From IMG/VR virus record IMGVR_UViG_3300043570_001980, positions 124,001-188,000 of that record: 64,000 nt of DNA; one strand, written 5' to 3'. Shown here one piece after another: positions 12,037-54,274 of this stretch (position 1 is the first letter of the stretch; the number at the start of each line of letters is the position of its first letter). The translations under genes were made by a program, and so were the position numbers. Under the pieces are notes generated by a model. That model saw nothing but the letters and a program-made list of their open reading frames with translations, searched no databases and was not told where the DNA came from.

Positions 12037-12047
12037 AAAGGATTTTT

Positions 12048-12316: not shown

Positions 12317-12317
12317 A

Positions 12318-12344: not shown

Positions 12345-12440
12345 GACCAAAATACCCCAAATTTTAATTGATGTTACCACAAACTCTAATACATAGTAGC
12401 GAATGATTTAAAGCTCATTCTCTTTTTAAGGAAAACAAAA

Positions 12441-25870: not shown

Positions 25871-25881
25871 GGCAATATAAA

Positions 25882-37786: not shown

Positions 37787-39260
37787 ATGTTTCATTTAGC
37801 AAGTACCTTTGTATTTTTCCATTGGTATTTTTGGGTAATTCCTTGGTTACACGAATGTACCTAGGGCACTTAAAATAATCCAATTTGTGTTTTATCAACG
37901 ATTTTAATTGGTGATCAAAATTTTCTGGGATTTCTACATCGGGTGCTAGTACAATGTATGCAACGATTTCTGTTAACCCATCACTGTTCTCAATACCCGA
38001 CACACCAGCTTCAAATACCAATTCGTGCGATATTAATAAATTTTCTATTTCTACTGGGCTGACCCAGTTGGCATTCACTTTTAGCATATCTTTAGAACGC
38101 CCAACAAACTGATATGTATCACCTTGTTGTATAAATTTGTCTCCTGTTTTACACCATTTACCTATAAAAGTTTCCTGGGACTTTTTGGTTTCATTTTGAT
38201 ATCTAAGAGCCATCGACGGACCATCAATATACAATTCTCCCACTTGATTTTGTACAACACAATCATTGGCATCTTTTACCATTCCTGAAAATCCTGGTAA
38301 TAATTTTCCTGACACAATAACCGGTGCTAGTAATTCGGTACTACCGTACCCGTCAACGATAGGTAATTTTGTTAACTCCTGCCATCGTTGTTGCATGGTA
38401 GATGTTATTGCCTCACCAGCACTTACGCACAATCTTAAAGACCCATAGTTAATTGGTAAATTTTCATTTAACAATCCAACATAAAAAGACGGAACTGATC
38501 CAAATAACGTGGGTTTGTGTTTTTTAAATATCCTTGCCGCAGTACTAGGAGTATGTAATTTACCATGCAATATTGTTGTGGCTCCCACAGTCAATGGAGA
38601 TATAAATGCACTACTTATTCCCCAACTAAAAAACAATTTTGATGTGGCAAAAACAATATCGTCGGACTTATAACCTACATCGATCCCGTAGCCTAACCCT
38701 ACACCAATCATTGATCTATGAGAATGTACAACTGATTTAGATTCTCCTGTACTGCCCGAGGTAAACAACCAAAATGCTTCGCCGTCTCTTAGAGTTGTTG
38801 GGGGATCAAAACTTGATGGAGTACTCAATATATTTAGTTGTTCAATAGATAACACATGCTTGGGCTTGTGTGTAGTTTCAGCAAGGTAACTGTCAATGGA
38901 TTGATTTTGTGTTGTTCTATTATTTGCAAAAATAATAACTTTTGCGGCGCTGGATTCAATAAAGTGACAAATAGTTTTTTTAGGCGACCACGGATTTCCG
39001 ATAACCGGAACAAATCCTCCTAATATACAGCCTAGTATTGCAATGCCGCATTCGATAGTGTCCGGCATTAATATTAACACACGATCTTCTCTTGTTAACC
39101 CCATGTCTGTGAGACTTTTAGCAAATCCCCGAGATCTATGCTCAAGCATTTCATAACTAATCGAGCTGGTATCATCAATTAATGCAATCTTATTTCCTAA
39201 TTTTTTTCCAAAAATGTGTTTGGCAAAATTAAATTTAACAGGTATATCTGTTAACTGCAT
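37770..39260 (-). CDS. Benzoate/aryl-CoA ligase family adenylating enzyme
   Basis: FWLFTSGSTGESKSVVH, SKLFFSWG, SAGE, DGYGSTE, TGDK, LPKNTNGKIQR. Confidence 0.88.
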   Translation of the reverse strand: MQLTDIPVKFNFAKHIFGKKLGNKIALIDDTSSISYEMLEHRSRGFAKSLTDMGLTREDRVLILMPDTIECGIAILGCILGGFVPVIGNPWSPKKTICHFIESSAAKVIIFANNRTTQNQSIDSYLAETTHKPKHVLSIEQLNILSTPSSFDPPTTLRDGEAFWLFTSGSTGESKSVVHSHRSMIGVGLGYGIDVGYKSDDIVFATSKLFFSWGISSAFISPLTVGATTILHGKLHTPSTAARIFKKHKPTLFGSVPSFYVGLLNENLPINYGSLRLCVSAGEAITSTMQQRWQELTKLPIVDGYGSTELLAPVIVSGKLLPGFSGMVKDANDCVVQNQVGELYIDGPSMALRYQNETKKSQETFIGKWCKTGDKFIQQGDTYQFVGRSKDMLKVNANWVSPVEIENLLISHELVFEAGVSGIENSDGLTEIVAYIVLAPDVEIPENFDHQLKSLIKHKLDYFKCPRYIRVTKELPKNTNGKIQRYLLNETYEQSK

Positions 39261-40747
39261 ACAGTTACTCCATATAATTTTTCAAATCTATCAGCATCGA
39301 CTCTATCATTAACCATGGGCTCTCCACGTATGTTTAAGCTGGTGTTTAACAGCATTGGGCAACCAGTCATCACGTACCACTTTGCCAACAATTGTCTAAT
39401 TCCCGATCCATCATTCGGAACTGTCTGAACACGACTAGTGCCATCAACGTGAACGATAGCAGGAAATATGTGAGGATGCCTGCAACGAGCGATGACTTGC
39501 ATATACCTACTGTCACTGAAGCCACGAGGCATATCAAAATACATATCAACATGCTCCTCCAGAATGACTGGCGCAAATGGTCTGAATTTTTGTCTGCGTT
39601 TGATTTCATTTACACGATCCTTTATTTCTGATCCTCTTGGGTCGGCCAATAAACTGCGGTTGCCCAGTGCTCTAGGACCAAACTCTGCTCTACCGCTAGC
39701 CACTCCAACAATTTGATTTTTAAGTAGCTCATCAAGTATACTGTTAACTGGATACGGTCCAGGAATGTCATGCCCAAGAAAAGCACTAGTCCAATTAACT
39801 CTGTGACCGTATGCCAAAGCGGCAGCGCCAAGACTGCTGCCTGCGTCGCCAGGATTAGGCATAATCCAAATATTATTAAAATAGTTTCCAAGATGTCTAT
39901 TTGCAAGGCAATTTAATGCCACGCCTCCCATGTATACAAGATTATCGCTCCAATTTAAAGACTTGGCACGTTTCATTACATTGACAATTAATTCTTCTAC
40001 TAGCTGTTGTGCTGATGCGGCAATGTCTTCATTGGTGGCAGCTTCTAAGTAAGTTGCATCTAATCCAGTGTGAAGATTATCTTTAAACTTGATAGTATCA
40101 AGATCTTCAATAAGACCCTGATTCATTTTTTCATACCACGAGGATTTCCCCCATCCCGACATGCCCATGGTAATGTATTCTTCGTCCATTGGGTGTAGTC
40201 CAATACGTTTAGTTATTGCACTATAAAACAACCCTATACTATGAGGATACCGTTGGCTCCACAACTTTTTATAAGTTGCTCGATGTGTAGAATCGTACAT
40301 TGCTCCCCAGATACTAATAGTATCCCATTCACCTATTGCGTCTATAACGACAACGGTGGCCTTGGTAAAGGGACTGGTTTGGAATCCTGCGGCAGCATGG
40401 GACAAATGATGTCCAGCATGTAAAAATAATGGCTCTTTATGAAAAGATACAGGTACATGTTTATGCAAATACTTACGAACAGTAATATCGGTAAAATCCA
40501 ACGCTTCATTATATTGTCCTGCGTAAAAGTTTCTTAGCTTTTTAAGCCAAGGTTTTTCGTAAAAAGCAACAACGTCTGGCTCGCCATACGATAATGCCTC
40601 TGCTACCAAGTCTTGATTGATATGAGGATCATGCTTGCTTTTACTGTAGCGTTCGGCGTGGCCGGCAAATAAAATATCGCCTTGATTAGCAATTACCGAT
40701 ACGGCAGCGTCATGAAAACCAGCACTTATACCTAGGTATTTTTTCAT
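39251..40747 (-). CDS. O-carbamoyltransferase (NodU/CmcH/TobZ family)
   Basis: HDAA, HHLSHA, GGVALN, EFGPRALGNRS, RPFAP, LNTSLN. Confidence 0.95.
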   Translation of the reverse strand: MKKYLGISAGFHDAAVSVIANQGDILFAGHAERYSKSKHDPHINQDLVAEALSYGEPDVVAFYEKPWLKKLRNFYAGQYNEALDFTDITVRKYLHKHVPVSFHKEPLFLHAGHHLSHAAAGFQTSPFTKATVVVIDAIGEWDTISIWGAMYDSTHRATYKKLWSQRYPHSIGLFYSAITKRIGLHPMDEEYITMGMSGWGKSSWYEKMNQGLIEDLDTIKFKDNLHTGLDATYLEAATNEDIAASAQQLVEELIVNVMKRAKSLNWSDNLVYMGGVALNCLANRHLGNYFNNIWIMPNPGDAGSSLGAAALAYGHRVNWTSAFLGHDIPGPYPVNSILDELLKNQIVGVASGRAEFGPRALGNRSLLADPRGSEIKDRVNEIKRRQKFRPFAPVILEEHVDMYFDMPRGFSDSRYMQVIARCRHPHIFPAIVHVDGTSRVQTVPNDGSGIRQLLAKWYVMTGCPMLLNTSLNIRGEPMVNDRVDADRFEKLYGVTVCS

Positions 40748-40846: not shown

Positions 40847-41935
40847 TTAGTTCTTTCGATTGATTATGTTTATCTGACGGTCTATAAAGTCTGAGTCTGA
40901 CCAATGATAGTCGTATATAGCACAACTACTGCTGGTACTCACGCTGTATACATCTAGACTATTATTTAATTGATTCCAAACGGTCAGGTAATCTTCTGTG
41001 TTAAAACTACGTTTTAAATCTACTTGTCCCACTTGAGGATGCCCAATGGTTAATAGTTTATCATTAGGGTCAAACCCATTGACTATTAACCATTCTTTAA
41101 ATTCAGCTAGTTTAATTTGTTGCCAGCTGTGATTACCTGGATTATTTGCCCACTCAATATCAAAATCTCCAGCGGCTTCAGTCTGACTGCGCATAGAGGT
41201 AGTGACTAATTCACTAACTCGACTGTCACGGCCTTCGTCCATGAATACTTCCCAATGATGTTTTCCAATTGCCTTGTTAACTCCAACAAACACTCCTCCA
41301 AGACTGCGGTTTATTGTTTCAATACCAAATAAATCATAGTCATTTTCGTCAAGAGTAAATCTTGGCGCATTTAACCAACACATTAGTTGGCTGGGTCGTT
41401 GCCACTCAGGTGCTTCTATTTCTTTACGATAACTCAATGCCCATGTTTCAAACTCATGACAGAGTAAATTTAATTGTCTTATATGCCAGCGTATGTCAGC
41501 ACTGGCGTGATTAAAATAAACCGACATGCTACCGCTTACGCCCTGAAGGTCTTCAAAATAACGATGCAACCAATTCAAGCGTTCATGAATCATATTCCTA
41601 CCAACTGTTCTTGATCCTACAGGATCATCAGTGATAGTGTTTTCCATTGTAAAATAATCATCAATGGTATATCCAATATTTGCTTGATTAATTGCATTTA
41701 TTGATTTGTTTACCTGTTCAAGAATGTACCACCCATTGCGCTGACTTTGAGTAAATCCTAAAAAACAAAAATTTTTTTCTAAATGAGAGTCATTTGTTAA
41801 CAAACCGTTTAATGCATTTAACCATTTACGAGATAATGAACTATCATAGACGTCAATATAAACTGAGTGAAGATTATCTGTATTTCTATTTTTAAGTTCA
41901 ATTTTAATCTGTTCTAATATTTTTCCACCAGCCAT
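40847..41935 (-). CDS. Hypothetical protein
   Basis: 362-aa ORF in a tightly coupled operon. Confidence 0.75.
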   Translation of the reverse strand: MAGGKILEQIKIELKNRNTDNLHSVYIDVYDSSLSRKWLNALNGLLTNDSHLEKNFCFLGFTQSQRNGWYILEQVNKSINAINQANIGYTIDDYFTMENTITDDPVGSRTVGRNMIHERLNWLHRYFEDLQGVSGSMSVYFNHASADIRWHIRQLNLLCHEFETWALSYRKEIEAPEWQRPSQLMCWLNAPRFTLDENDYDLFGIETINRSLGGVFVGVNKAIGKHHWEVFMDEGRDSRVSELVTTSMRSQTEAAGDFDIEWANNPGNHSWQQIKLAEFKEWLIVNGFDPNDKLLTIGHPQVGQVDLKRSFNTEDYLTVWNQLNNSLDVYSVSTSSSCAIYDYHWSDSDFIDRQINIINRKN

Positions 41936-43208
41936 ATATTTTGTTATCCTGTTGTAGTATTTGGTCTAGCCCAAATGTATCATTTCTAATAGATTCCAAT
42001 TGTAACATTCTGAACTTTCCTCTTGCAAGACCTTTTTCCCAGGTGTCGGGCCATTGTTCTGCAAAAGTTGGGCGTGATTTTAGTTGTAGTAACACATCCT
42101 TCAACGCACCTGGAGGTAAGTTAGTTACTAGACGATCTACTGTGCTGTCTAATAACTCACGAGGCAATGCCAATGGACTCATAATGATGTCCGGGCTAAA
42201 ACTAAAAATCACCTTGGCTAATATATCAACCCCAAGCTCATTTGATAACTGCTGTATATTACCAACTTCAAATAGTCCAGGTAATGTGAGAGTAAAATCA
42301 ATTCGCATTTGCCTGCGATGTTTTTGTATCTCAATTCCCTGTTTAAAGTTTTTTAGAAAGGTGGAATATTCAAGCCCTGTGCGGATGTATTCTCCTGTGG
42401 CTCCTGTTCCGTCGAGGCTGGCACAGATTTGCCAATCGCGAACATTAGATAAAATATCACGATATAGATTAATACCCCGAAAATCAACGCGACTAAGATT
42501 GGTGTTATACCTGGCATATAATTGTCCTCCATCATTTAATTCAATAATACGTTTCATATACCGCCAATGTTGTTCATACATTAGAGGTTCACCGCCTACC
42601 CAATAGACTTCTTCAACTCTGTGTTCTTCTACTGCTTCTGCAAATTCTTTTTCAATTTGCGTGTCCTGGAATTTACTAATTTCTGTTCTTACTGCTGGTT
42701 TCATCCAGTTATTTCTTGGATCCGAATAGTCAATAAGATTGTGTTGACGTTCTTCGCTTTCCCAACTACTAGACAACATATCCCCACACATGCGACATTT
42801 GAAATTGCAAAGATTGCTAAATCTATAATCCCAACTTATTGGTTTCATAGTTGTAGATCCGTTAGGCTGTGTTTTTTCCATGGCCTCTTCATAACGATGT
42901 TTGAATAGGTGCCAGAAATATGTTCGATAGACATCAGTATTTAACAGTTTACTGTTACAAACATCACATTCGGGCAAAATTTCTCCTGCCATCATACGTT
43001 GTCTAACACTTTTCATATGATCGCTATTCCAGTGTTGATCTAGTGTGAGTGGAATATATTTTCCTGTGCCTGCTGATGTGTCAATGTACTGTTGAAAATT
43101 TTGTGCAGGTTCGCGGCTAGCACAACACATTCTGCGTTCGGTTTGAGGACTTAGATAGGTATGCACCCAGGGTGCCATACACAAAGATTCAGGTTTATTC
43201 ATAAGCAA
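41904..43208 (-). CDS. Radical SAM protein with an N-terminal twitch/SPASM-like domain
   Basis: CMAPW..CC..CDVC; CNFKCRMC; GGEP. Confidence 0.9.
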   Translation of the reverse strand: MLMNKPESLCMAPWVHTYLSPQTERRMCCASREPAQNFQQYIDTSAGTGKYIPLTLDQHWNSDHMKSVRQRMMAGEILPECDVCNSKLLNTDVYRTYFWHLFKHRYEEAMEKTQPNGSTTMKPISWDYRFSNLCNFKCRMCGDMLSSSWESEERQHNLIDYSDPRNNWMKPAVRTEISKFQDTQIEKEFAEAVEEHRVEEVYWVGGEPLMYEQHWRYMKRIIELNDGGQLYARYNTNLSRVDFRGINLYRDILSNVRDWQICASLDGTGATGEYIRTGLEYSTFLKNFKQGIEIQKHRRQMRIDFTLTLPGLFEVGNIQQLSNELGVDILAKVIFSFSPDIIMSPLALPRELLDSTVDRLVTNLPPGALKDVLLQLKSRPTFAEQWPDTWEKGLARGKFRMLQLESIRNDTFGLDQILQQDNKIYGWWKNIRTD

Positions 43209-44400
43209 TTGTTTTAGCCAACTCTGAATGATGTTGATTTAAATCTTGGCTTCTTCGTAGATCTATTTCTTTAATTTTTTCACGTAGTAAAGAACCATCA
43301 AGACTTGTTCCTTGCATCATAAATTGAATAATTTTTTCAAACTCCTGTTTTGTATTACCTAGAGTTGCTGTACTTTCCAATTTTTGTTTGACATATTGTT
43401 TTGACAGTTCAGGCAATGATCCTATGCTAAAATAATATGCTTCGTGCAACATATTCCAATAGATAAAATCAAAACTAGCCAACTTGTGCCAGGCCGCAAG
43501 CTCTTCAAGATACAGCACATTAAAAACATTAACAGTACTACAACATTGTAACTGTAGGTTAGGCATTGTAGATTGTAACAATTTAAACTTGTTAATGTTT
43601 TCGTTTACTTCTTTCCAACTAGCATTCATGCGTTGGTATTCAAATCTTGGTCCTACGTCATCTATGCTAAATGCAACTTCAACTGTTTTAAAGTGTCGCC
43701 AAATGTCAGGCGCACGTTCAGGAACTATGGTTCCGTTTGTATTGTAATGTATCTCTACTTGTCCAGCAATTCCTCTGTCTATAATTCCTTGTAACATATC
43801 AAAATGTTCGCTGATCATAAAAGGTTCGCCACCGGTGAATTCTATATAGTGTATGTCAGATAGGCATTGATCAATTTGTTGCCAAAATTGTTTATTTTCT
43901 CTTGGCCAACTACCAGCACGTAGCATCTGATAGGCAAATGTTTTTTTACGATCTTGGTGTGGTACAGCCATCATTTCTTCTGTTGCATACGAACTTGATG
44001 ACCACGAACCACATATACGGCATTTAAGATTACAGATATTTCCTAGTTTTAAATCCAAGAACATCATTGGTTTTTCATCTTCACTCCAGGACTGATTGCC
44101 AACAATATGTTTTAATCGATCAATAGTGTGCATTCGTTTACTTGTTCTACCTGAATCTTCTTCGTTCCAACACTTCTTACAGGTATTAGGTTTTTGTCCT
44201 GTCAGGAATTGCTGTCTAAGATTTTTCATGTAATCTGAATTTCTTATTTCAACGAAGTCGGCTTTGGTCAATTCAAATTTATTGCCATCATTGTCAATTA
44301 TTTCATCTTCGGCAAGACAGCAAGGACGTACAGTCCCGATGGGACTAGCTTCTAAACTGATCCAAGGCAGTACACAAAATTTATCCTGTGGTAATTTCAT
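43195..44400 (-). CDS. Radical SAM protein with an N-terminal twitch/SPASM-like domain
   Basis: CVLPW..PCC..CKKC; CNLKCRIC; GGEP. Confidence 0.9.
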   Translation of the reverse strand: MKLPQDKFCVLPWISLEASPIGTVRPCCLAEDEIIDNDGNKFELTKADFVEIRNSDYMKNLRQQFLTGQKPNTCKKCWNEEDSGRTSKRMHTIDRLKHIVGNQSWSEDEKPMMFLDLKLGNICNLKCRICGSWSSSSYATEEMMAVPHQDRKKTFAYQMLRAGSWPRENKQFWQQIDQCLSDIHYIEFTGGEPFMISEHFDMLQGIIDRGIAGQVEIHYNTNGTIVPERAPDIWRHFKTVEVAFSIDDVGPRFEYQRMNASWKEVNENINKFKLLQSTMPNLQLQCCSTVNVFNVLYLEELAAWHKLASFDFIYWNMLHEAYYFSIGSLPELSKQYVKQKLESTATLGNTKQEFEKIIQFMMQGTSLDGSLLREKIKEIDLRRSQDLNQHHSELAKTIAYE

Positions 44401-45662
44401 TTTAATGCCGTTAATTCTGGGATGATATCCAAGATGTTTTCGTTTCTAATACCGTCCAGATCATGCGTCTTACGCCAAAATTGATCTATTAACTGTGTGT
44501 TATCCGTGGCATTCATAAAGGTGATTGCACTTTTAAAACCTTGTGTGGCACGACCCAACGGATCTCCTACTTGTGTCAACCATTCGATATGATCATAATA
44601 CTGTGCTGTGAGTCTCTCTTTGTAGTTAGCAGGAGCAATATCAATTCTATAATGCACAGGATCTTGTAAAATGTTTACATTAAGATCCTGTGGTTTTAGT
44701 AGGCCTTGTTGTACCCATGCACGATGGAATTGTGTTAAATGCATGGCATTCATAATACTTAATGTAGGACTGATATAAAAATCCACGCCTGGACAGATTT
44801 CAATCATGTCTCTGCGATTTTGTTCTACCACTGCCCAATCAGTGCCTTTGCGTATGTATTCCGCACGTGGTCCCATTGCATCTAAACTTGCGCCAACTGC
44901 AACCGAATTAAATTGTTTCCAGTACTCAAATACGCTATTACCTTTAAGGTCTGTGTGCGTGAAGTTGGTGTTGTATATCAGTCTAACATCAAAGCGGCCA
45001 CGTTTGACCAGTTCGTCAAGAATGTTATAGTGCTCTTCCATCAGCAAGGGTTCGCCGCCAGCAAAGTAAATCTGCTCCACATAGTCCAGGTGTGGCTCTA
45101 GTTGTTGCCACATGTCTGTTTCGGTGCGGCCGGCATAGTTGAGTACTTTATTACGATCTTTCCAATCACCGCCGGCCAGTTTGGCCTGGTCTTGATACCA
45201 CTGTGAACTAAAGATGTGTCCACATGATCTGCACTTTAAGTTGCACAAATTACTAAAGCGAATGTCCCAGTAAGTCATTTCAAAGGGATTTTCTTCCAGT
45301 TTCTTTATCTGATGTCCGTGATGCTTGTTGGCGCTTTTGCGGCCACTAAAGAATCCAGATTCTTCTTGTTCATAACAGCGTGTGCAGGCGGCGTGTGGAG
45401 TTTCGCTCAACATGTCTGCACGTAGTTTCTGCATGGGTTTGTCGCGCCATATTTCTTCTAGTGTGTTTGTGCGACAATTACCCACAACACCGGGCTTCAT
45501 TTCAGCATGACAGCAAGGATATGCTTCTCCGGTGGGATAAGCGTGTAAATGTATCCAGGGATAGATGCAGAACGTTTTAGAATCTTCTAATAGAAAACGC
45601 TCACGCTCGGTGAGTTCTGTAGAACGCACTAGGTCTGTACTGTTATACTTGTATTGAGTCAT
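44397..45662 (-). CDS. Radical SAM protein with an N-terminal twitch/SPASM-like domain
   Basis: CIYPW..PCC..CTRC; CNLKCRSC; GGEP; start reassigned to MTQY. Confidence 0.9.
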   Translation of the reverse strand: MTQYKYNSTDLVRSTELTERERFLLEDSKTFCIYPWIHLHAYPTGEAYPCCHAEMKPGVVGNCRTNTLEEIWRDKPMQKLRADMLSETPHAACTRCYEQEESGFFSGRKSANKHHGHQIKKLEENPFEMTYWDIRFSNLCNLKCRSCGHIFSSQWYQDQAKLAGGDWKDRNKVLNYAGRTETDMWQQLEPHLDYVEQIYFAGGEPLLMEEHYNILDELVKRGRFDVRLIYNTNFTHTDLKGNSVFEYWKQFNSVAVGASLDAMGPRAEYIRKGTDWAVVEQNRRDMIEICPGVDFYISPTLSIMNAMHLTQFHRAWVQQGLLKPQDLNVNILQDPVHYRIDIAPANYKERLTAQYYDHIEWLTQVGDPLGRATQGFKSAITFMNATDNTQLIDQFWRKTHDLDGIRNENILDIIPELTALK

Positions 45663-46974
45663 ACCATTCTTTAAGATTAGGAAATGCCTGAGCAAAATCT
45701 TTACCGCGGCGCTGATCATATTGTGCATGAAACTTGTAAAAATCATTCAGCAATTTAGGCATGTCAAACGCATCCGAGTGCGGAGTTTTTACCACGTCTA
45801 GATAATCAATTAATCGCTGAGTGTGATTAATTTCGTGTTCGTGCAAATAGCTGTGACCTTTGTGTTTACCCATCCAGTCAATTAAATCTTGTTTGTATTG
45901 ATTTCTTAAAGATTCACCGAGTACCAATGCACTTTGGAAACTGGGGAATCGCAGGATATTCAGTGTAAAATTAATATAGTCACGACCGTAGATTTTTTTC
46001 CATTCAATCAGTTGGTCTAAATGTTTAGGAAGGCTATCCAGGCACAAAGCATTAATAGTACACATACAATGTACCACTATACCAGCATCCAATAGTTTCA
46101 GCACATTAGCACACCACGCTTGATAGTCTAGACCGTCTCGAATGTATTCTGCTTGTGTACCCACTGCTTCCATGCTTGTGTATATTTCTACTTGCAAGCC
46201 TTTAATACTGTCTAGTAAACGATCTATGTCTACTTCAGCACCTAAATTTGAATTAATTGCCAATTGTGTGTGGCTACGCCCGGGATTGTTTTTAAACCAG
46301 TCAATCAGTTTCCAGGTCTCACCTGACATCAATGGCTCACCACCGGTTATTCTGAGCTCCTGAAGAGTTTGGTGGAGGTCGCTTTCCCACCAAGCAAAGA
46401 ATGCGTCCACATAAGGATTTTGTTCTCCAAACTTGTAAAGTTGGGAGGCAGCGTGATCATGAGTAAAATGATTCCTGCCATCGCTAACCAAGCCCTGGTA
46501 AGCGCCGTTGTTTCGTATATCTTTAACCCATGTACTACTAAAAGCAGGATTACAGTAGCTACAAGCAAACTGGCAAGTGCGATCAAACGCAATCTCTAGT
46601 GTTCGAAGATTGATGTCATTGCTGGCCGGAGTGCGGAAAGCATGATTTAAGTCCTCTATAGGGTAAATTTTACTTTTGTATACACGGTCACTGATTGCAT
46701 CTCGGCCAATGTCTTCAATTTTCCAGCAGTATTCACAACCGCTAGGACGCTCACCTTTCTGCATCATTTCTCTATCGGCTTTTTTTCTCTGTGTGTTATG
46801 TAACGCTGATGGGTTGCGTTTAATATCATCTACATCAATAGCGTGTGCCGGTGGATGATGACAGCTAGTTGTTTGGCCTGATCCTAGCCATATAGTAGCA
46901 TTGTACCATTTGGCCGCACAGAAACTAGAACTTTTGGTATCTAATATTTGTTGTCGGAATTCTAAATCATTCAT
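45643..46974 (-). CDS. Radical SAM protein with an N-terminal twitch-like domain
   Basis: CAAKW..SCHHP..CEYC; CQFACSYC; GGEP; start reassigned to MNDL. Confidence 0.9.
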   Translation of the reverse strand: MNDLEFRQQILDTKSSSFCAAKWYNATIWLGSGQTTSCHHPPAHAIDVDDIKRNPSALHNTQRKKADREMMQKGERPSGCEYCWKIEDIGRDAISDRVYKSKIYPIEDLNHAFRTPASNDINLRTLEIAFDRTCQFACSYCNPAFSSTWVKDIRNNGAYQGLVSDGRNHFTHDHAASQLYKFGEQNPYVDAFFAWWESDLHQTLQELRITGGEPLMSGETWKLIDWFKNNPGRSHTQLAINSNLGAEVDIDRLLDSIKGLQVEIYTSMEAVGTQAEYIRDGLDYQAWCANVLKLLDAGIVVHCMCTINALCLDSLPKHLDQLIEWKKIYGRDYINFTLNILRFPSFQSALVLGESLRNQYKQDLIDWMGKHKGHSYLHEHEINHTQRLIDYLDVVKTPHSDAFDMPKLLNDFYKFHAQYDQRRGKDFAQAFPNLKEWYDSIQV

Positions 46975-48118
46975 CGAAGTGACTTTGTTTAATAAATTGC
47001 AGGAATCGTCTAGGAAATTCTTTACGCACAGTTTGGCGCATTTCAAGCAGATGTTGTTGATTGTATTTACATACATTATAACACGATTTGAGGAATTCAT
47101 CAAGATCTTGCTTACACAAATCTTCAACTATTTGTGTAATACGTGTGAGTCTATCCTGCGTATTGTCAATTTCATCAAAACTTTCATCAATCACATGTGA
47201 AAATGTTTGAAATCCTAGATTGCGCATGTCTCGATAGTATCCTCGATTGGCTGCCGCTATCCACGGGTGTCCAATAGCCACAGGTTTCCAAATTTTTTCA
47301 GTTCTAAAACTATACGGATAGTCACATACTGTTTCGGAAACTAGACTAAAATATGTATCAATATAAGGTTCTGCTTTGAGATAGATTTCTCCCCATTCTT
47401 GATCAAACAGATTGTGTTTAATAAAGCCTAATTTGGGCACTAGATCAATGTTGTTACAATAACGATCAACTTCGTATTTGGATGGCAACAGGTGTGGTTC
47501 TCTCAAAGTAAACATCTGATCCTGCCCATTAAATGGCACAGATAAATTTGAGTACATACTTTTTCTTGATTCAAGACTAGTCCACAGACTTTGATCTAAC
47601 AGTCCCATTAAATCAAGTTTTTCTATTAGGAATTTTCTATGTCCTCTCAAGCGGCCATTTAAAAACAAAAATTTAAAAGGCTTGTTGGGCGTGGAGTACA
47701 AGGCCTCTGACCGATTAATCTCTATTAGATTTTGTTTATAGTCATGTATCTTGGGCAAGAAACTATCATAGACTAAACACGGCCAGTCTGGCTCCATGTC
47801 TCCGCCACCGATTAATAAAATACGCCCTTGCACAACAAGATCGGCAATGTTATGCACACTCTCACAATGTGCTTTTAACGTTTCGCTACCTTCAGCTGGA
47901 TTGCTTAATACAACACGTATAGTGTCAGATTCAACTAACTCACGAATTCTCTCTTTATTCAAATTAAATTGTGTTCGACCTATAATATAAATTGCACCCG
48001 GAACAATAGTGTGATTACTAAAATCATAAAAAGACTCATCTTCCCAGGGTAGTAGTTGATCGTAGACTTCGCAAAATGTATCTAGAATAAGTTTACGTTT
48101 GTCTAGCATGGTACTCAC
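46967..48118 (-). CDS. Glycosyltransferase-like protein, ET..TEK family
   Basis: FSLVSET...RTEKIWKPV...GFQTF...DESFD. Confidence 0.6.
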   Translation of the reverse strand: MSTMLDKRKLILDTFCEVYDQLLPWEDESFYDFSNHTIVPGAIYIIGRTQFNLNKERIRELVESDTIRVVLSNPAEGSETLKAHCESVHNIADLVVQGRILLIGGGDMEPDWPCLVYDSFLPKIHDYKQNLIEINRSEALYSTPNKPFKFLFLNGRLRGHRKFLIEKLDLMGLLDQSLWTSLESRKSMYSNLSVPFNGQDQMFTLREPHLLPSKYEVDRYCNNIDLVPKLGFIKHNLFDQEWGEIYLKAEPYIDTYFSLVSETVCDYPYSFRTEKIWKPVAIGHPWIAAANRGYYRDMRNLGFQTFSHVIDESFDEIDNTQDRLTRITQIVEDLCKQDLDEFLKSCYNVCKYNQQHLLEMRQTVRKEFPRRFLQFIKQSHFDE

Positions 48119-49508
48119 ATTCTTTCCACCAATCTGACATTTCAGGAAATGTTTTTAAAAAATCTGTTCCTCGTCGAGAGTCGTGTTCGTTAAAAAATCT
48201 ATAAAAATCAGCACGATTTTTATTAACGTAACCTTGTTGCAACTTCTGTCCATCTTTCATCCAGGCAATATCTCTGCGCAGGCGTTGTACTTCGTAGTCT
48301 TTAAATCCGTGAAATGGGTTGCTAGGGGTTTCTAAATTAATTTCCATCCAATCAGCAATTCGTTCAAGTATGCTTGCATAGGCTGGTGGAAGTATTTGTA
48401 GACTTTGCCAGGTTGGTTGTCTAAGAAGAGGCGTATCAAACCAAACACGCTGATAGGTATGGCTATGTTGTTTTCGTAATTCTAATATCCATTCCAATTG
48501 TGTTTTTAACCCTAACACACTTAGATTGTTCATGGTAATAATAAATGTCAAACTATTACGATTAGGAATGTCCAACAAGAAATGATTTACACGGCTTTGC
48601 ACACGATAAAAATCCATGCCATGGCGAATGTATTCAGCATGCTCTGGTATGCCTGAATCCAAACTAACATACTGCATAAAATGTTCAATGTTGGTGTTAC
48701 ATAACTGTTTAACATAATCAAAATACTTGTTCCATAACTGCGGTTCTACGCTAAAGTTACTGGTAACATTTAAATGCAACTCAGGGTTGGGTAGTGCTAG
48801 CACATAGTCAAATACCTTGTAGGTATTTTTATCCATTAGAGGCTCGCCACCAGTCATGCGAAAATGTTTTAGTTTAGGATATAATGTAGGCCACCACTTC
48901 CAGAACGCTTCCACATAAGGGTTCTCGTGACTAGCTGGTATAGGTCGATTGCGGCCAGTGAAGTGGCTAGGATCATTATGGATAATACTAGTAGGATATC
49001 CGCCTGAGCGTTGTACTTCTGCTTGCCAGGTGCTACTAAATTGTGGACTGCAATAGCTACAAGATAGATTACAAGCGTGATTAAAATTAACTTCGACATA
49101 ACTAGGCACAACATCTTCATTGCCTGTTGAGTTTTTTATTTGTTCAAAATCCATTGCGGCCCAAGGTTCACCGCTACGATAGTGTCTATCACTTAGTTTT
49201 CCTAGATCCTCCATGGTCCAGCAATAACTACACTCCGAAGGTCGCTCGCCGTTGAGCATCATTTTACGCTGTTCTTTTTTATATGGAGTATTGTGTAATG
49301 CTCCAGGATTATGTCCAATTTCTTCTATGGGTATTCTATGCAATGGTGGATGATAACAACTGTTGTTCATTCCGGTGGGCAGATGAAGGCTAACTTGTTT
49401 CCACTTGGCCAAACACAAGCTAGGTCCTAGCACAGTTTTCATATCTTCTGCAGAACTTAAAAATTCAGATTTAAAGTCTGTTAATTTTGTGTCAACTTTA
49501 TTATTCAT
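48093..49508 (-). CDS. Radical SAM protein with an N-terminal twitch-like domain
   Basis: CLAKW..SCYHP..CSYC; CNLSCSYC; GGEP. Confidence 0.9.
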   Translation of the reverse strand: MNNKVDTKLTDFKSEFLSSAEDMKTVLGPSLCLAKWKQVSLHLPTGMNNSCYHPPLHRIPIEEIGHNPGALHNTPYKKEQRKMMLNGERPSECSYCWTMEDLGKLSDRHYRSGEPWAAMDFEQIKNSTGNEDVVPSYVEVNFNHACNLSCSYCSPQFSSTWQAEVQRSGGYPTSIIHNDPSHFTGRNRPIPASHENPYVEAFWKWWPTLYPKLKHFRMTGGEPLMDKNTYKVFDYVLALPNPELHLNVTSNFSVEPQLWNKYFDYVKQLCNTNIEHFMQYVSLDSGIPEHAEYIRHGMDFYRVQSRVNHFLLDIPNRNSLTFIITMNNLSVLGLKTQLEWILELRKQHSHTYQRVWFDTPLLRQPTWQSLQILPPAYASILERIADWMEINLETPSNPFHGFKDYEVQRLRRDIAWMKDGQKLQQGYVNKNRADFYRFFNEHDSRRGTDFLKTFPEMSDWWKECEYHARQT

Positions 49509-50073
49509 TTAAAATATTTTGTAAAAAATCAAAAAGTTGCTCGGTACCTTTAACATTTAGATGTCCGTCATCAAGTCGACCATTTGGACCAATCATGGGA
49601 TATTCTAACTGGCGAACCGTTTTTCTGTTTTCCCAGGAAAATCCAAGAACTTTTTTGTTACAAGAATTTAAAAAACTAATTGATGTGTCGATTAACATGT
49701 CACTTAAATTTTCACTATACGGAGGACCAAAAACAGAATAAAAATATTTGTACATCTCAGTGTGTGCAATATCAAGTGTTGCTGGCTCAAGAGCCAGTCC
49801 TTTACCGTGAAACCCTGTAAAAAAATCTAAATTCTGATCGTTATATTTTAATCCAAATCTAGACGAATATGTAAAACCTAATACAAATATATCGGCATTT
49901 TGAAAATTTTGATAAGCATCAAATGCAATAGACATATTACTTTTACCTTGCCTTGAGTTGTCAATTACTTGATACCCGCCGCGAGTATTAAATAGGCTTC
50001 CTAAAGAATCTTGTCTTTTAAGACCTTGCCCGTAGGTCAAACTACATCCGTCAAGGTATAATCGTGTTACCAT
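49501..50073 (-). CDS. SGNH-like hypothetical protein
   Basis: DGCSLTYG, GKSN and DDGH motifs. Confidence 0.65.
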   Translation of the reverse strand: MVTRLYLDGCSLTYGQGLKRQDSLGSLFNTRGGYQVIDNSRQGKSNMSIAFDAYQNFQNADIFVLGFTYSSRFGLKYNDQNLDFFTGFHGKGLALEPATLDIAHTEMYKYFYSVFGPPYSENLSDMLIDTSISFLNSCNKKVLGFSWENRKTVRQLEYPMIGPNGRLDDGHLNVKGTEQLFDFLQNILNE

Positions 50074-50993
50074 CCTTCTTGTTCCCTTATTACATCTAGT
50101 TCGCGTGTCATTATACCTCGGTTGTGCCAGTTGCTCAGATAATGATGTTTAAAAAATTCACTTTCTTCTCGACCCAACACAATGACAGGTAAATCCAGTT
50201 GTTGATTTAGATCGGCAGCAATTCTATCAAACACGATTTCTGGAGTGTGATCTTTGACAGTATCCCACAAAGTTGCTAACGCATCAAAATTTTGAACTAG
50301 CCGATAATCCCAGTCGGTTAGCATGGTCATGTAAGTGCCCATTCTGCTGCCGGCAATGGCCCAGGCACCGTTTTCAGCATCAGTTCCTACATTATGCCAA
50401 ATTGTAAGATGATCAAAATTACGTTTATGCACACGATCTCTAAATTCAGCCACTGATGGTTTATGACCTTTGTCTAGGCACATCTTGACACCTTCTCTAA
50501 ATCCTGCTCGCCAGGCCTGGAACGGTGTTCCGTTTGGATAGGTAGTACTGTAACAATCATACATGGCAAAGTAATTAGGCTCAAAACAAAACTCAACAAG
50601 ACTTTCATCTCGTCCATCTGTGTTTTCATGAGTTTTCATATTCCACACAAACTCTCGAGTCCAAGAACTTAATCCTCCATTACCATACATTAATCCGTTG
50701 ATATGATTACGTGCTCTCCAACGAAACACTGAATTGTGTTTATCATCATCTTTAAAATCTAATGTTAGATTAAAAAATTTCGAATCTGGCAAATTGTCGC
50801 CGTCGATTAAAATAAATCGTTCTGTTTCGCTGACATCACCAGCGGCTTTGTGTGCGGCATCTGAGCCTTTAACACCATCCACACGTTTGGCCCAGGGAAC
50901 CATGTTTTTAATCTTGACCCAGAATTCTTCTTTCTGTGGTTCATCATAGCTGAGGTAAATCACATCAAGATCAGCAATATCAACTTGTTTCAT
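50067..50993 (-). CDS. GT-A fold glycosyltransferase-like protein
   Basis: DVIYLSYDEP, FILIDGD (DxD), YGNGG, WRAGFREG. Confidence 0.65.
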   Translation of the reverse strand: MKQVDIADLDVIYLSYDEPQKEEFWVKIKNMVPWAKRVDGVKGSDAAHKAAGDVSETERFILIDGDNLPDSKFFNLTLDFKDDDKHNSVFRWRARNHINGLMYGNGGLSSWTREFVWNMKTHENTDGRDESLVEFCFEPNYFAMYDCYSTTYPNGTPFQAWRAGFREGVKMCLDKGHKPSVAEFRDRVHKRNFDHLTIWHNVGTDAENGAWAIAGSRMGTYMTMLTDWDYRLVQNFDALATLWDTVKDHTPEIVFDRIAADLNQQLDLPVIVLGREESEFFKHHYLSNWHNRGIMTRELDVIREQEGW

Positions 50994-51327
50994 TAGTTCT
51001 TAAACTCCATTTTATATTAGGTATAGAATTATCTACAACAACACAGATATCCCTAGGATCACAGGGTATTCCTGTGTCTCCTGGCACCAATTTATTAGTG
51101 ATAGTGTGTTTTATATAGATTAATTTATTGTCGACTACTCGAACATTACTTGGCAACAAGGAAAATGTTTCTCTGTCGATTTCAATATAATTACCTGGCA
51201 CATCCTCCATGCTATAAAATAAAGGAAAGCCTGCATCATCATGATATAAACGATAAAATATTGGTTTTGGTGTCGGTAGATCCCATTCGTTGAATGCTTT
51301 CCAAAAATTTTCTGTAGTTTCATTCAT
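50980..51327 (-). CDS. Hypothetical protein
   Basis: Coupled ORF. Confidence 0.7.
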   Translation of the reverse strand: MNETTENFWKAFNEWDLPTPKPIFYRLYHDDAGFPLFYSMEDVPGNYIEIDRETFSLLPSNVRVVDNKLIYIKHTITNKLVPGDTGIPCDPRDICVVVDNSIPNIKWSLRTNETS

Positions 51328-52099
51328 TGGCTGTGGCCCAATCTTTTATATGATAATGAAAGAATCCACTTTGTGTAATTGTGTGTATCCTTAATCCAGG
51401 GTCTGCATTTTCCCAGACTAGTTCTTTGCTCCAATTGCCGGTATGTGTGGGTATAATATAACGCTTCATATGAACAATTGTAGGACCAAAATTTGTTGGT
51501 AATACACAATTCTCAATGCCGACTATTTTGGCAGCCATGGCATATACTAAATCAGTTGTAGGGATATCGTCGGGGAATTTTAATAATTTTTTAAAGGACT
51601 CCCAGTCAGAAAATATTGCCCTTACTAAATCAAAAAATTCCTTGGCTGTTTTACTCACACGCCAGTAAGTTATAGCATTGTAAACATCAGGCAAGTTGTT
51701 AGAATCAAAAACTTTTCTGTAATATCTTGACTTACTTATCTGTCCGTAAAAATCTCTACAGCCTTGACTGATTGCCACATCTTGGTGTTCAAACAATGTC
51801 CACCAGTGGTCCACAGCACTTGTGGCAATCATGTCTGCTTCTAGTTTAATAGTTTGTCTATAAGGACTAGCGGCAAATACTTGCCAGTCGTTGGCATATC
51901 CTCCTAGGTCACCGTGTGGCAACGGAATCACATGATCGAACACAGGGTCACTGCATTGTTTTACTGACAGTACAGAGATATTGGCATCTGGATGCCACTG
52001 GCGAATAGATCTAGCAAGTTGTACAGCACAACCCAAGTAGTCAACAGAGTCAGTGTCAATTGCCGGAATAAGATAACCACGTTCAGCAAGGATTGGCAA
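51320..52099 (-). CDS. GT-A (GT8-like) glycosyltransferase-like protein
   Basis: DYLGCAVQLARSI, SPYRQTIKLEAD, VHMK. Confidence 0.6.
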   Translation of the reverse strand: MPILAERGYLIPAIDTDSVDYLGCAVQLARSIRQWHPDANISVLSVKQCSDPVFDHVIPLPHGDLGGYANDWQVFAASPYRQTIKLEADMIATSAVDHWWTLFEHQDVAISQGCRDFYGQISKSRYYRKVFDSNNLPDVYNAITYWRVSKTAKEFFDLVRAIFSDWESFKKLLKFPDDIPTTDLVYAMAAKIVGIENCVLPTNFGPTIVHMKRYIIPTHTGNWSKELVWENADPGLRIHTITQSGFFHYHIKDWATANE

Positions 52100-53194: not shown

Positions 53195-53219
53195 ATAGTC
53201 AATTATACAGGGTATATTG

Positions 53220-53248
53220 AAAAAAGTAAAGGGCCCAGAGGCCCTTTT
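53220..53248 (-). terminator. Intrinsic terminator (possibly bidirectional)
   Basis: AAAGGGCC-caga-GGCCCTTT with flanking A/T tracts. Confidence 0.7.
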
Positions 53249-54253: not shown

Positions 54254-54274
54254 TTTCTGTTGTCCTAGTTATTT

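What the first reader, a model, noticed from the sequence alone, without database searches (positions are those of the whole stretch)
41904..49508. Five radical SAM paralogs with an N-terminal twitch-like domain in one operon
Seen: five CxxxCxxC enzymes in two subtypes (C..PW/CC three times; C.AKW/SC.HP twice), with the auxiliary Cys cluster before the SAM domain rather than C-terminal, interleaved with GT-like genes. Established: twitch-domain enzymes such as BtrN oxidise sugar hydroxyls. Inference: serial radical tailoring of a glycan, a large Fe-S investment for a phage.
Basis: partly seen in the sequence, partly recalled or inferred. Interest (0 to 1): 0.65.

Follow-up and report, generated by a model that had tools for sequence, protein, structure and literature searches.

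The report
Five-paralog radical SAM glycan cassette
A 342-kb lake-water jumbo phage carries a conserved operon of five very divergent radical SAM enzymes of an uncharacterised family (auxiliary iron-sulfur domain in front of the catalytic barrel), mixed with sugar-transfer and sugar-modifying genes, which most likely carries out a series of radical modifications on a sugar chain.

Summary
Five minus-strand genes (41904-49508) each match NCBIfam NF033640, "twitch domain-containing radical SAM protein", at 285-395 bits (cut-off 170). Each has four invariant N-terminal Cys plus CxxxCxxC.

The one interleaved gene folds as a GT-B glycosyltransferase. The paralogs are only 17-31% identical to each other. 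Each has its own orthologues in more than 50 related 340-350-kb phage contigs, in a more distant phage lineage and in a Bacteriovoracaceae genome. The set is therefore an old multi-enzyme cassette, not a recent duplication.

The context points to sugars:
- A DesII-like, DegT and dehydratase amino-deoxysugar operon lies next door.
- A carbamoyltransferase is linked in both phages and bacteria.
- Bacterial homologues sit beside glycosyltransferases, Wzm/Wzt-like ABC exporters, NDP-sugar enzymes and nucleotidyltransferases.

No member of the family is characterised. No equivalog or PDB sequence match was found. The fold matches cover only the generic radical SAM core (BlsE Z 14.1, anSME 13.6, BtrN 6.1).

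The whole genome holds 15 radical SAM ORFs and two IscA-type genes. The exact chemistry and the acceptor (virion fibre, envelope or other) remain inferred.

The parts
41904..43202 (-). rS1: N-terminal-twitch radical SAM enzyme, subtype CxxPW/CC (ORF runs to TTG 43208; ATG at 43202)
   Evidence: NF033640 at 284.7 bits. Own orthologue clade with L085 and the Bacteriovoracaceae locus L105, SH-aLRT 100. Nine Cys kept in 56/56 orthologues.
43195..44400 (-). rS2: N-terminal-twitch radical SAM enzyme, subtype CxxPW/CC
   Evidence: NF033640 at 339.9 bits. Pfam SPASM at residues 9-78 followed by Radical_SAM at 119-273. ATGA start/stop overlap with rS3.
44397..45662 (-). rS3: N-terminal-twitch radical SAM enzyme, the most conserved and most widespread type (ORF runs to 45746; orthologues start at 45662)
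   Evidence: NF033640 at 394.6 bits. AF2 model pLDDT 95. 10,013 clusters at 50% identity match at E<=1e-3. 75-100% identical in 80 phage loci.
45643..46974 (-). rS4: N-terminal-twitch radical SAM enzyme, subtype CxAKW/SCHHPP (ORF runs to 47127; ATG at 46974)
   Evidence: NF033640 at 299.6 bits. 31% identical to rS5. Own clade with SH-aLRT 100.
46967..48109 (-). Interleaved GT-B-fold glycosyltransferase-like protein (GTG at 48118 or ATG at 48109)
   Evidence: No Pfam, NCBIfam or PHROG hit. AF2 pLDDT 84. The top 50 VIA-align matches are all GT-B glycosyltransferases, best Z 13.2 with 274 residues aligned. Foldseek finds fucosyltransferase, exostosin and T4 BGT.
48093..49508 (-). rS5: N-terminal-twitch radical SAM enzyme, subtype CxAKW/SCYHPP
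   Evidence: NF033640 at 317.1 bits. 65% identical to its L085 orthologue and 50% to the L105 one. Clade SH-aLRT 100.
49501..50073 (-). 190-aa ORF, variable; found in only a few related phages
   Evidence: Synteny table. No family hit.
50067..50993 (-). u308: highly conserved 308-aa protein with an LIDGDN motif; GT2-like is a lead only
   Evidence: 69-74% identical across the clade and 61% in L085. Atlas feature score 0.99 to a viral cluster auto-named 'Glycosyltransferase 2-like'. hhalign against a bacterial GT2 profile gives no support.
50980..51327 (-). u115: small conserved ORF, function unknown
   Evidence: Conserved in synteny. No family hit.
51320..52889 (-). u259 and u268: two paralogous 260-aa proteins (LDADY motif in u268); GT-A/GT8-like is a hint only
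   Evidence: Conserved in synteny, with orthologues in L085 and L102. Marginal glycogenin match at E about 1. phrog_1903, function unknown. hhalign probability below 1%.
52886..53194 (-). u102: first gene of the operon, small conserved ORF of unknown function
   Evidence: Synteny. No family hit.
53202..53247 (-). Terminator-like hairpin (53247-53228, 8 bp, T-run) overlapping a promoter-like site (53230-53202, 10 of 12). It lies in the only sizeable gap upstream of the operon, between the fibre gene and the glycan operon.
   Evidence: These are consensus matches only; the promoter count in the region is not above chance.
53267..55705 (-). Two fibre-like proteins just upstream: a 328-aa Ser/Thr/Gly-rich protein, and a 476-aa protein with a tail-fibre PHROG hit and a Peptidase_G2 chaperone-like C-terminus
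   Evidence: Linkage to the cassette is kept even in the marine contig L102, at 30% and 41% identity.
40847..41935 (-). unk362: conserved 362-aa protein of unknown function between rS1 and the carbamoyltransferase
   Evidence: Synteny. Found in phage-type contigs only. No family hit.
39251..40747 (-). NodU/CmcH-type carbamoyltransferase
   Evidence: Pfam Carbam_trans_N and Carbam_trans_C. Conserved in the clade, in L085 and in L098. A carbamoyltransferase lies within 10 kb in 9 of 53 bacterial loci.
35301..39260 (-). AMP-binding ligase (37770-39260) and two flavin-dependent Trp-halogenase-like genes (36536-37795 and 35301-36539). This is an accessory tail of the operon present only in the three closest relatives.
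   Evidence: Pfam hits; synteny.
24920..30347 (+). Convergent amino-deoxysugar operon: TauE-like membrane protein, NDP-sugar epimerase/dehydratase, DegT aminotransferase, DesII-like radical SAM (27877-29259), DegT aminotransferase
   Evidence: Pfam hits. TIGR04426 rSAM_desII at 339.7 bits, which is below the cut-off of 450.

Best explanation
**What it is.** The five genes encode genuine radical SAM enzymes of the uncharacterised N-terminal-twitch family (NF033640). Together they form an ancient, co-inherited multi-enzyme cassette that tailors a sugar or glycan.

**How each enzyme probably works.**
- The CxxxCxxC cluster binds SAM and generates the 5'-deoxyadenosyl radical.
- That radical abstracts a hydrogen from a sugar carbon.
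- A second [4Fe-4S] cluster is held by four invariant Cys in the N-terminal, sequence-permuted twitch domain. It either takes up or returns the electron, or helps position the substrate.
- The five paralogs have long-separated, individually conserved sequences. This suggests five different positions or reaction types, for example epimerisation, dehydrogenation, deoxygenation or decarboxylation.

**How the operon probably works.** It runs from 53194 to 35301. It combines these enzymes with one GT-B glycosyltransferase, further GT-like candidates and a carbamoyltransferase. In this phage it also carries an acyl-AMP ligase and two halogenases. It draws on a neighbouring operon that makes an amino-deoxysugar through a DesII-type route.

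**Acceptor.** The phage has no recognisable exporter or sugar nucleotidyltransferase, and the cassette always follows the tail-fibre genes. The acceptor I consider most likely is therefore a virion protein (fibre) glycosylated in the cytoplasm from host NDP-sugars.

**Shown:** family membership, Cys motifs, fold, synteny, orthology and neighbourhoods.

**Inferred:** cluster binding, a sugar substrate, the division of labour among the paralogs and the virion acceptor.
For: **Enzyme identity.** NF033640 is matched above its cut-off by all five genes. Pfam places SPASM N-terminal to Radical_SAM. Seven Cys and the GGEP motif are invariant and are kept in all orthologues. The rS3 model has pLDDT 95 and a radical SAM core that matches BlsE at Z 14.1, anSME at 13.6 and viperin at 12.9.

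**Operon structure.** Start and stop codons overlap or lie 4-32 nt apart throughout the block.

**Old cassette.**
- The paralogs are 17-31% identical to each other.
- Each has an orthologue at 57-86% identity in at least 50 related phage loci with the same gene order.
- Each has an orthologue at 34-65% in L085, which carries eight such genes in a row.
- Each has an orthologue at 35-52% in the Bacteriovoracaceae locus L105, which also carries eight in a row and an Obg gene.
- A quick ML tree gives SH-aLRT 96-100 for the rS1, rS3, rS4 and rS5 clades.

**Sugar context in the phage.** The interleaved gene has a GT-B fold. DesII-like, two DegT and an epimerase/dehydratase lie next door. The carbamoyltransferase, DegT and epimerase are again linked in L085.

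**Sugar context in bacteria.** Recurrent neighbours in 53 loci are GT4 (13 loci), ABC ATPase (12) with ABC-2 permease (6), carbamoyltransferase (9), NDP-sugar epimerase (9), GT2 (7) and UDP-glucose dehydrogenase (7). NTP_transferase heads the arrays in L082 and L105, and a PMT_2 GT-C is present in L170.

**Cytoplasmic acceptor.** The phage genome has no ABC_tran hit above the cut-off, and no ABC2_membrane or NTP_transferase hit. Fibre linkage is conserved down to 30% identity.
Against: - No member of the family has a known reaction, so the chemistry is inference only.
- Several of the best fold matches are peptide-modifying SPASM enzymes (anSME, SuiB, SkfB, CteB).
- 31 of the 53 bacterial loci had none of the recurrent glycan-type neighbours. 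Some 'MAG' contigs are probably mis-binned phage (L096-L098, L102).
- The GT assignment of u308 and u268 is unconfirmed: hhalign probability below 1% and PDB profile E about 1.
- No RNA run holds the region, so expression is not shown.
- A terminator-like hairpin separates the fibre gene from the operon. Fibre adjacency may therefore be only positional.
- Two other family copies sit beside primase and helicase genes.
Confidence: 0.6

Rival explanations
1. The five enzymes are protein or peptide maturases (RiPP-like). They would introduce cross-links, epimerisations or oxidations into a phage protein, for example the adjacent Ser/Thr-rich fibre, or into a small peptide such as the products of 52886-53194 or 50980-51327. 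The GT, carbamoyltransferase, ligase and halogenases would act as further tailoring enzymes of that peptide.
For: Most characterised SPASM/twitch enzymes act on peptides. anSME, SuiB, SkfB, CteB, EpeE and PqqE are among the top fold matches. Weak NCBIfam hits go to peptide maturases. Fibre genes lie directly upstream, and two small conserved ORFs sit in the operon.
Against: - None of those equivalogs comes near its cut-off.
- There is no intergenic room for a precursor gene inside the rSAM block.
- The small ORFs are not Cys-, Ser- or Gly-repeat peptides.
- Bacterial homologues sit beside polysaccharide genes and exporters, not peptide, protease or transporter sets.
- The best structural match is the sugar-nucleoside enzyme BlsE.
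Confidence: 0.15
2. The cassette builds or tailors a glycan on phage DNA (a base hypermodification) to evade host restriction.
For: The interleaved GT-B resembles the T4 beta- and alpha-glucosyltransferases (Z 12.6 and 11.8). Phages are known to decorate DNA with diverse glycans (cited in PMC12619734). Two further family copies lie next to primase and DnaB-like helicase genes.
Against: - The 95%-complete genome has no thymidylate-synthase-like hydroxymethylase.
- The GT-B matches to protein and lipid glycosyltransferases are equally good.
- Bacterial homologues are linked to surface-polysaccharide export.
- The operon lies in the fibre and structural region.
Confidence: 0.07
3. The cassette remodels the host cell envelope (LPS, O-antigen or capsule) during infection, for example to block superinfection or to stop progeny from sticking to debris, rather than decorating the virion.
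For: Bacterial homologues lie in Wzm/Wzt-type polysaccharide loci. A TauE-like membrane protein is encoded in the neighbouring sugar operon.
Against: No ABC exporter, ABC-2 permease or nucleotidyltransferase was found in the phage genome. Linkage to fibre genes is strict across distant relatives. However, host export machinery could be used, so this rival is weakened and not excluded.
Confidence: 0.15

Closest known systems
NCBIfam NF033640 (N_Twi_rSAM, twitch domain-containing radical SAM protein)
   Same: All five proteins, and three more in the genome, match over their full length above the curated cut-off. They share the defining order: N-terminal twitch-like Cys domain, then the CxxxCxxC barrel.
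   Different: The family is a bioinformatic subfamily with no assigned reaction. What is added here is a fixed five-type cassette shared by jumbo phages and Bdellovibrionota.
BlsE, cytosylglucuronate decarboxylase (PDB 7VOB)
   Same: Best structural match: Z 14.1, 222 residues aligned, rmsd 3.6. It is a radical SAM enzyme acting on a sugar nucleoside.
   Different: Only the radical SAM core aligns (model residues 117-392) at 15% identity. The NCBIfam BlsE model scores 16 bits against a cut-off of 400. Here the auxiliary-cluster domain precedes the core.
   Same: A radical SAM enzyme with one auxiliary cluster in a twitch domain that oxidises a sugar-like hydroxyl (established knowledge).
   Different: Weak fold match: Z 6.1 with 116 residues aligned. 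The twitch domain is C-terminal in BtrN. There is no sequence-family match.
SPASM peptide maturases (anSMEcpe, SuiB, SkfB, CteB)
   Same: Core fold matches at Z 12.5-13.6. The N-terminal domain is homologous to the first half of their SPASM domain: Pfam PF13186, and weak hits to the C-terminal parts of the StsB, NirJ2, mycofactocin and AlbA models.
   Different: Their domain is C-terminal and carries 7-8 Cys for two clusters. Here there are four invariant Cys, placed N-terminally. No RRE was found and there is no peptide context.
DesII (dTDP-4-amino-4,6-dideoxy-D-glucose ammonia-lyase)
   Same: A radical SAM enzyme acting on an NDP-sugar. A DesII-like gene (27877-29259) lies in the adjacent operon, showing that this island already uses radical sugar chemistry.
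   Different: DesII-type proteins form a different family without the N-terminal Cys domain. The five paralogs do not match TIGR04426.
Virus-encoded virion glycosylation systems (mycobacteriophage capsid and tail-tube glycans; giant-virus fibril glycans)
   Same: Viral gene clusters with sugar-nucleotide enzymes and glycosyltransferases that decorate virion proteins (Freeman et al. 2023 as cited in PMC12619734; otherwise my own knowledge).
   Different: As far as I know, none of those systems contains radical SAM enzymes. Virion glycosylation is not shown for this phage.

Membership tests
Radical SAM superfamily | CxxxCxxC motif for the SAM-binding [4Fe-4S] cluster | tested here: met
   Invariant in all five genes and in 56-62 of 56-62 orthologues of each. 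Pfam PF04055 hits.
Radical SAM superfamily | Partial TIM-barrel core with a GGE-type SAM-binding motif | tested here: met
   GGEP is invariant. The AF2 model has pLDDT 95 and its core aligns to many solved radical SAM enzymes at Z 10-14.
Radical SAM superfamily | Reductive cleavage of SAM to the 5'-deoxyadenosyl radical | not testable with these tools
   Needs anaerobic biochemistry.
NCBIfam NF033640 N_Twi_rSAM | Whole-protein HMM score above the curated cut-off (170 bits) | tested here: met
   284.7, 339.9, 394.6, 299.6 and 317.1 bits, each covering about 1-398 of 398 model positions (repeated).
NCBIfam NF033640 N_Twi_rSAM | Twitch (half-SPASM) Cys domain N-terminal to the radical SAM domain | tested here: met
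   Pfam SPASM lies at residues 9-78 (rS2) and 60-125 (rS3), ahead of Radical_SAM. The C-x12-G-x4-C ... CxxC pattern is present, with four invariant Cys.
NCBIfam NF033640 N_Twi_rSAM | One auxiliary [4Fe-4S] cluster actually bound by the N-terminal domain | not testable with these tools
   Only four invariant Cys are present, not the 7-8 of SPASM, which fits one cluster. EPR or Mossbauer spectroscopy is needed.
BtrN-type twitch dehydrogenases | C-terminal twitch domain after the barrel | tested here: not met
   The Cys domain is N-terminal. The C-terminal 80 residues are helical and carry no invariant Cys.
BtrN-type twitch dehydrogenases | Close sequence or structural similarity to BtrN | tested here: not met
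   Z 6.1 with 116 residues aligned. No PDB sequence hit at E<=1.
SPASM peptide maturases (anSME, sactisynthases, PqqE, MftC) | C-terminal seven-to-eight-Cys SPASM domain binding two auxiliary clusters | tested here: not met
   Only the first half of the motif is present, and it is N-terminal.
SPASM peptide maturases (anSME, sactisynthases, PqqE, MftC) | Equivalog HMM above its cut-off, or a cognate precursor peptide gene nearby | tested here: not met
   Best maturase hits score 15-29 bits against cut-offs of 265-850. Genes overlap, leaving no room for a precursor within the block.
GT-B glycosyltransferases (for the interleaved gene 46967-48109) | Two Rossmann-like domains with the GT-B topology | tested here: met
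   AF2 pLDDT 84. All 50 top VIA-align matches are GT-B enzymes, Z 13.2-9.1 with 250-299 residues aligned.
GT-B glycosyltransferases (for the interleaved gene 46967-48109) | Sequence-family membership or identified donor-binding residues | tested here: inconclusive
   No Pfam, NCBIfam or PHROG hit, and no PDB profile hit. The Atlas lead to GT10 scores only 0.79.
DesII (TIGR04426), for the neighbouring gene 27877-29259 | Equivalog score above the cut-off of 450 bits | tested here: not met
   339.7 bits at E 2.6e-101 over the full length. It is DesII-like, but equivalence is not established.

The most novel reading that the evidence does not exclude
The five paralogs form an obligate radical cascade carried out by a domain-permuted twitch family whose chemistry has never been described. 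It would produce a heavily rearranged or multiply epimerised/deoxygenated sugar, possibly carbamoylated and acylated with a halogenated group, that decorates the fibres of a globally abundant clade of lake and marine jumbo phages. The same cassette has been exchanged with predatory Bdellovibrionota, where it tailors their surface polysaccharide.
Probability: 0.3. Interest if true: 0.8.

Novelty: new variant of a known kind. Interest (0 to 1): 0.6.

Why it matters
**For enzymology.** The family is very large. It has 10,013 clusters at 50% identity, and 22% of the sampled genomes in the phylum of L105 carry it, with up to 11 copies each. It was not found in the 14 model-organism controls, and I found no paper describing a reaction for it. 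A conserved, compact phage operon with a defined neighbouring sugar pathway is a good entry point for discovering that reaction.

**For phage biology.** A phage that invests in 15 radical SAM enzymes and its own Fe-S carrier proteins, and that keeps five of them next to its fibre genes across distant relatives, probably depends on an elaborate glycan for adsorption, stability or evasion. That would extend virion glycosylation to aquatic jumbo phages and would add radical chemistry to it.

Tried and rejected
- Megablast of the region against 50,697 phage records found no match. A tblastn with rS3 found only three distant hits: Vibrio phages K566 and K567, and Ralstonia phage RsoM2USA.
- rS3 gave no PDB sequence hit at E<=1.
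- Literature searches for 'twitch domain-containing radical SAM', 'N-terminal SPASM', and radical SAM combined with carbamoyltransferase/jumbo phage or O-antigen/capsule found nothing on this family. The RadicalSAM.org paper only notes that some SPASM/twitch megacluster members carry N-terminal Cys. The 'moraphage' paper describes a different lineage (up to 307 kb) and does not mention radical SAM.
- The first genome-contig scan, with rS2, found nothing. Alignment A1 was too divergent to make search patterns.
- Relatives cannot be drawn for a virus record.
- PHROG, Pfam and NCBIfam scans left 40847-41935, 49501-52889 and 52886-53194 unannotated.
- Profile searches of u308, u268 and the GT-B against the PDB were null or marginal. 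hhalign of u308 and u268 against a bacterial GT2 profile gave probability below 1%. Their GT nature therefore stays a lead.
- DNA hypermodification was considered and down-weighted because no thymidylate-synthase-like gene was found.
- Only DNA runs hold the region, so read laying was not used and expression is untested.
- The careful ML tree did not finish; the quick tree is reported.

Full report
**Where the window lies**

The window is bases 124001-188000 of a 341,990-bp IMG/VR virus record that is estimated to be 95% complete. The virus encodes a T4-type major capsid protein: Pfam Gp23, E 1e-100. That protein is 66-67% identical to the capsid proteins of the jumbo myoviruses Vibrio phage 2.275.O, Sinorhizobium phage Phosso and the Pseudomonas PA5oct group. 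The stretch 43195-48118 is present almost word for word in at least 20 lake-water metagenome runs. None of those runs is RNA.

**The observation**

Between 41904 and 49508 the minus strand carries six tightly packed genes. Five of them match NCBIfam NF033640, "twitch domain-containing radical SAM protein", over the whole model. I call them rS1 to rS5.

| Gene | Coordinates | NF033640 bits (cut-off 170) |
|---|---|---|
| rS1 | 41904-43202 | 284.7 |
| rS2 | 43195-44400 | 339.9 |
| rS3 | 44397-45662 | 394.6 |
| rS4 | 45643-46974 | 299.6 |
| rS5 | 48093-49508 | 317.1 |

- Pfam finds Radical_SAM in all five. In rS2 and rS3 it finds a complete SPASM model N-terminal to it.
- Weak NCBIfam hits align the N-termini of rS2 and rS3 to the C-terminal SPASM parts of the StsB, NirJ2, mycofactocin and AlbA models. 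This directly shows the permuted domain order.
- The five-way alignment has seven invariant Cys, four N-terminal and three in CxxxCxxC, plus GGEP.
- The broader 93-sequence alignment keeps the same Cys and the motif C-x12-G-x4-C ... CxxC. This is the first half of a SPASM motif, that is, a twitch domain.
rS1-3 have CxxPW...CC. rS4 and rS5 have CxAKW...SC(H/Y)HPP, so the second Cys of the CC pair is missing.
- Every Fe-S Cys is kept in all 56-62 distinct orthologues of each paralog.
- Gene ends overlap by 4 to 32 nt, so the genes form an operon.

**Not a recent duplication**

The paralogs are 17-31% identical to each other. A scan of IMG/VR with rS3 found 223 related stretches. The 80 loci kept come from contigs of up to 352 kb.

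In essentially all loci long enough to show it, the gene order is the same. Read 5' to 3' along the minus-strand operon, it is: u102, u268, u259, u115, u308, rS5, GT-like gene, rS4, rS3, rS2, rS1, unk362, carbamoyltransferase. The rSAM genes are 57-86% identical across these loci.

- A more distant phage-like lineage (L085-L087) has eight such genes in a row. They include orthologues of rS5 (65%), rS4 (53%), rS1 (44%) and rS3 (42%), together with orthologues of u308, u259 and u268, a carbamoyltransferase, a DegT aminotransferase and an NDP-sugar epimerase.
- A Bacteriovoracaceae MAG contig (L105) also has eight in a row, with orthologues of all five types at 35-52%. It carries Obg and a nucleotidyltransferase, so it is bacterial.
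- A quick ML tree puts each window paralog with its L085 and L105 counterparts. SH-aLRT is 100 for rS1, rS4, rS5 and the rS4+rS5 superclade, 96 for rS3, and weaker for rS2.

The five types therefore diverged before the cassette spread, and they travel together. This is what one expects of enzymes that act in one pathway.

**The family at large**

rS3 has 10,013 matching clusters (50% identity) at E<=1e-3 and 1,389 at E<=1e-30. No solved structure matches by sequence. None of the 14 control genomes has a member above the cut-off.

- In genomes sampled from the phylum of L105 (Bdellovibrionota by its record label), 33 of 151 carry the family, with up to 11 copies each.
- In the phylum of L155 (Bacteroidota), 3 of 201 carry it.
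- Multi-copy arrays are typical. 35 of 53 bacterial or MAG loci have two to eight copies within 21 kb, and fused two-domain proteins occur.
- I found no paper that assigns a reaction to the family.

**Structure**

The rS3 model is confident: pLDDT 95.1, pTM 0.92. The best matches are BlsE (Z 14.1), anSMEcpe (13.6), SuiB and viperin (12.9), SkfB (12.7) and MoaA (12.4). DesII scores 11.6, AprD4 8.8 and BtrN only 6.1.

The alignments start near residue 117-130, so only the common radical SAM core is matched. The fold therefore confirms the superfamily and does not point to a specific reaction.

**Evidence that the substrate is a sugar**

1. The interleaved gene 46967-48109 has no sequence-family hit, but it folds (pLDDT 84) as a GT-B glycosyltransferase. 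All 50 best VIA-align matches are GT-B enzymes. They include protein O-glycosyltransferases, fucosyltransferases, a chlorovirus GT and the T4 DNA glucosyltransferases.
2. Converging on the operon, the plus strand (24920-30347) encodes five genes: a TauE-like membrane protein, an NDP-sugar epimerase/dehydratase, a DegT aminotransferase, a DesII-like radical SAM enzyme (340 bits, below the equivalog cut-off) and a second DegT. This gene set is that of a desosamine-type amino-deoxysugar route. That reading is my inference from established pathway knowledge.
3. A NodU/CmcH-type carbamoyltransferase follows the cassette here, in the whole clade, in L085 and in L098.
4. I clustered all ORFs of 53 bacterial or MAG loci around rS3-type genes. 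The recurrent neighbours were:
   - GT4 glycosyltransferases (13 loci);
   - ABC ATPase (12) with ABC-2 permease (6), the Wzm/Wzt-type pair;
   - PhyH dioxygenase/methyltransferase fusions (11);
   - carbamoyltransferase (9);
   - NDP-sugar epimerase (9);
   - GT2 (7);
   - UDP-glucose dehydrogenase (7);
   - WelO5-like oxygenases (6).
5. Nucleotidyltransferases head the arrays in L082 and L105. A GT-C (PMT_2) and the ABC pair lie among the three copies in L170.

One caveat applies. 31 of the 53 loci had none of these recurrent families, and some MAG contigs are clearly phage.

**Acceptor**

The phage genome has no ABC exporter above the cut-off, no ABC-2 permease and no sugar nucleotidyltransferase. 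It must therefore use host NDP-sugars, and it has no obvious way to export a glycan.

The cassette is always found just downstream of fibre genes, even in a marine contig whose fibre proteins are only 30-41% identical. This favours cytoplasmic glycosylation of virion proteins. The point is positional only, because a terminator-like hairpin and a promoter-like site lie between the fibre gene and u102. Remodelling of the host envelope using host export machinery is not excluded.

A DNA-glycan role is less likely, because no thymidylate-synthase-like hydroxymethylase was found.

**Fe-S investment**

The genome holds eight NF033640 genes. Five are in the cassette, one lies at C1:14292-15599, and a divergent pair at C1:302113-304315 sits beside primase and DnaB-like helicase genes. 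In addition there are the DesII-like gene, three B12-radical-SAM-like genes and three small SPASM-like genes. That makes 15 radical SAM ORFs. There are also two IscA/HesB-type Fe-S carrier genes.

**Verdict**

It is not supported in its chemical detail or its acceptor.

The architecture is already catalogued as NF033640, so this is not a new kind of protein. The new findings are:
- a fixed five-type cassette conserved across an abundant aquatic jumbo-phage clade;
- its sharing with Bdellovibrionota;
- its consistent sugar context.

Together these make an uncharacterised, very large enzyme family experimentally approachable.

No alternative genetic code was used.

Noticed in passing
window 1694-8737 and 11944-12365: An array of 25 tRNA genes covering all 20 amino acids, followed by a permuted tmRNA gene with tag peptide ANDSQFALAA.
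   Followed up: no
window 24920-30347 (+): An amino-deoxysugar operon: a DesII-like radical SAM gene between two DegT aminotransferases, an NDP-sugar epimerase/dehydratase and a TauE-like membrane protein. The genome has no sugar nucleotidyltransferase, so the pathway must start from a host NDP-sugar.
   Followed up: partly
window 35301-39260 (-): Two flavin-dependent tryptophan-halogenase-like genes and an AMP-binding ligase end the operon. They are present only in the three closest relatives (L001-L003), so they are a recent add-on to the conserved cassette.
   Followed up: partly
window 56532-63998 (-): A giant ORF of at least 2,430 aa that runs off the window end. It lies upstream of the fibre genes and its only Pfam hit is a weak FG-GAP repeat.
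   Followed up: no
G000:C1:302113-304315 (L090:6114-8316): Two further divergent N-twitch radical SAM genes, arranged tail to tail, lie directly after Toprim primase and DnaB-like helicase genes. Their role in a replication-gene neighbourhood is unexplained.
   Followed up: partly
G000:C1:42602-42904 and 312065-312367: Two IscA/HesB-type Fe-S biogenesis genes are encoded by the phage. Three B12-binding radical SAM-like genes lie at C1:104221-106101, 211509-213086 and 250229-251746.
   Followed up: partly
L096, L097 (NZ_JBBAKG010000001.1 and NZ_JBBAKG010000003.1): Two contigs of 183 kb and 148 kb, filed under a Haliscomenobacter sp. MAG, carry the whole cassette at about 83% identity (rS3). They look like jumbo-phage DNA binned with a bacterial genome. 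At best this is a hint to the host.
   Followed up: partly
L131, L137 and about 15 other contigs of Elusimicrobia MAG MJ-2014_bin-0981: One MAG has family members on many contigs. L131 has eight consecutive ORFs of 495-1078 aa that all belong to the family, several of them fused multi-domain proteins. The 1106-aa protein P0122 in L082 joins two copies through TPR repeats, in an array of about eleven radical SAM genes headed by a nucleotidyltransferase.
   Followed up: no
window 30340-31971 (-) and 33034-34245 (+): The 543-aa minus-strand ORF shares about 28% identity with u308. The 403-aa ORF shows weak similarity to the GT-B gene (27% through its L097 orthologue). The sugar island therefore holds further paralogs of the unannotated GT-like genes.
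   Followed up: no
rS1 C262, rS2 C287, rS3 C290, rS4 C312, rS5 C270 (protein positions): Each paralog has one additional fully conserved Cys in the second half of the barrel. These Cys lie at positions that do not align between paralogs. They could be paralog-specific hydrogen-atom donors, but this was not tested.
   Followed up: no
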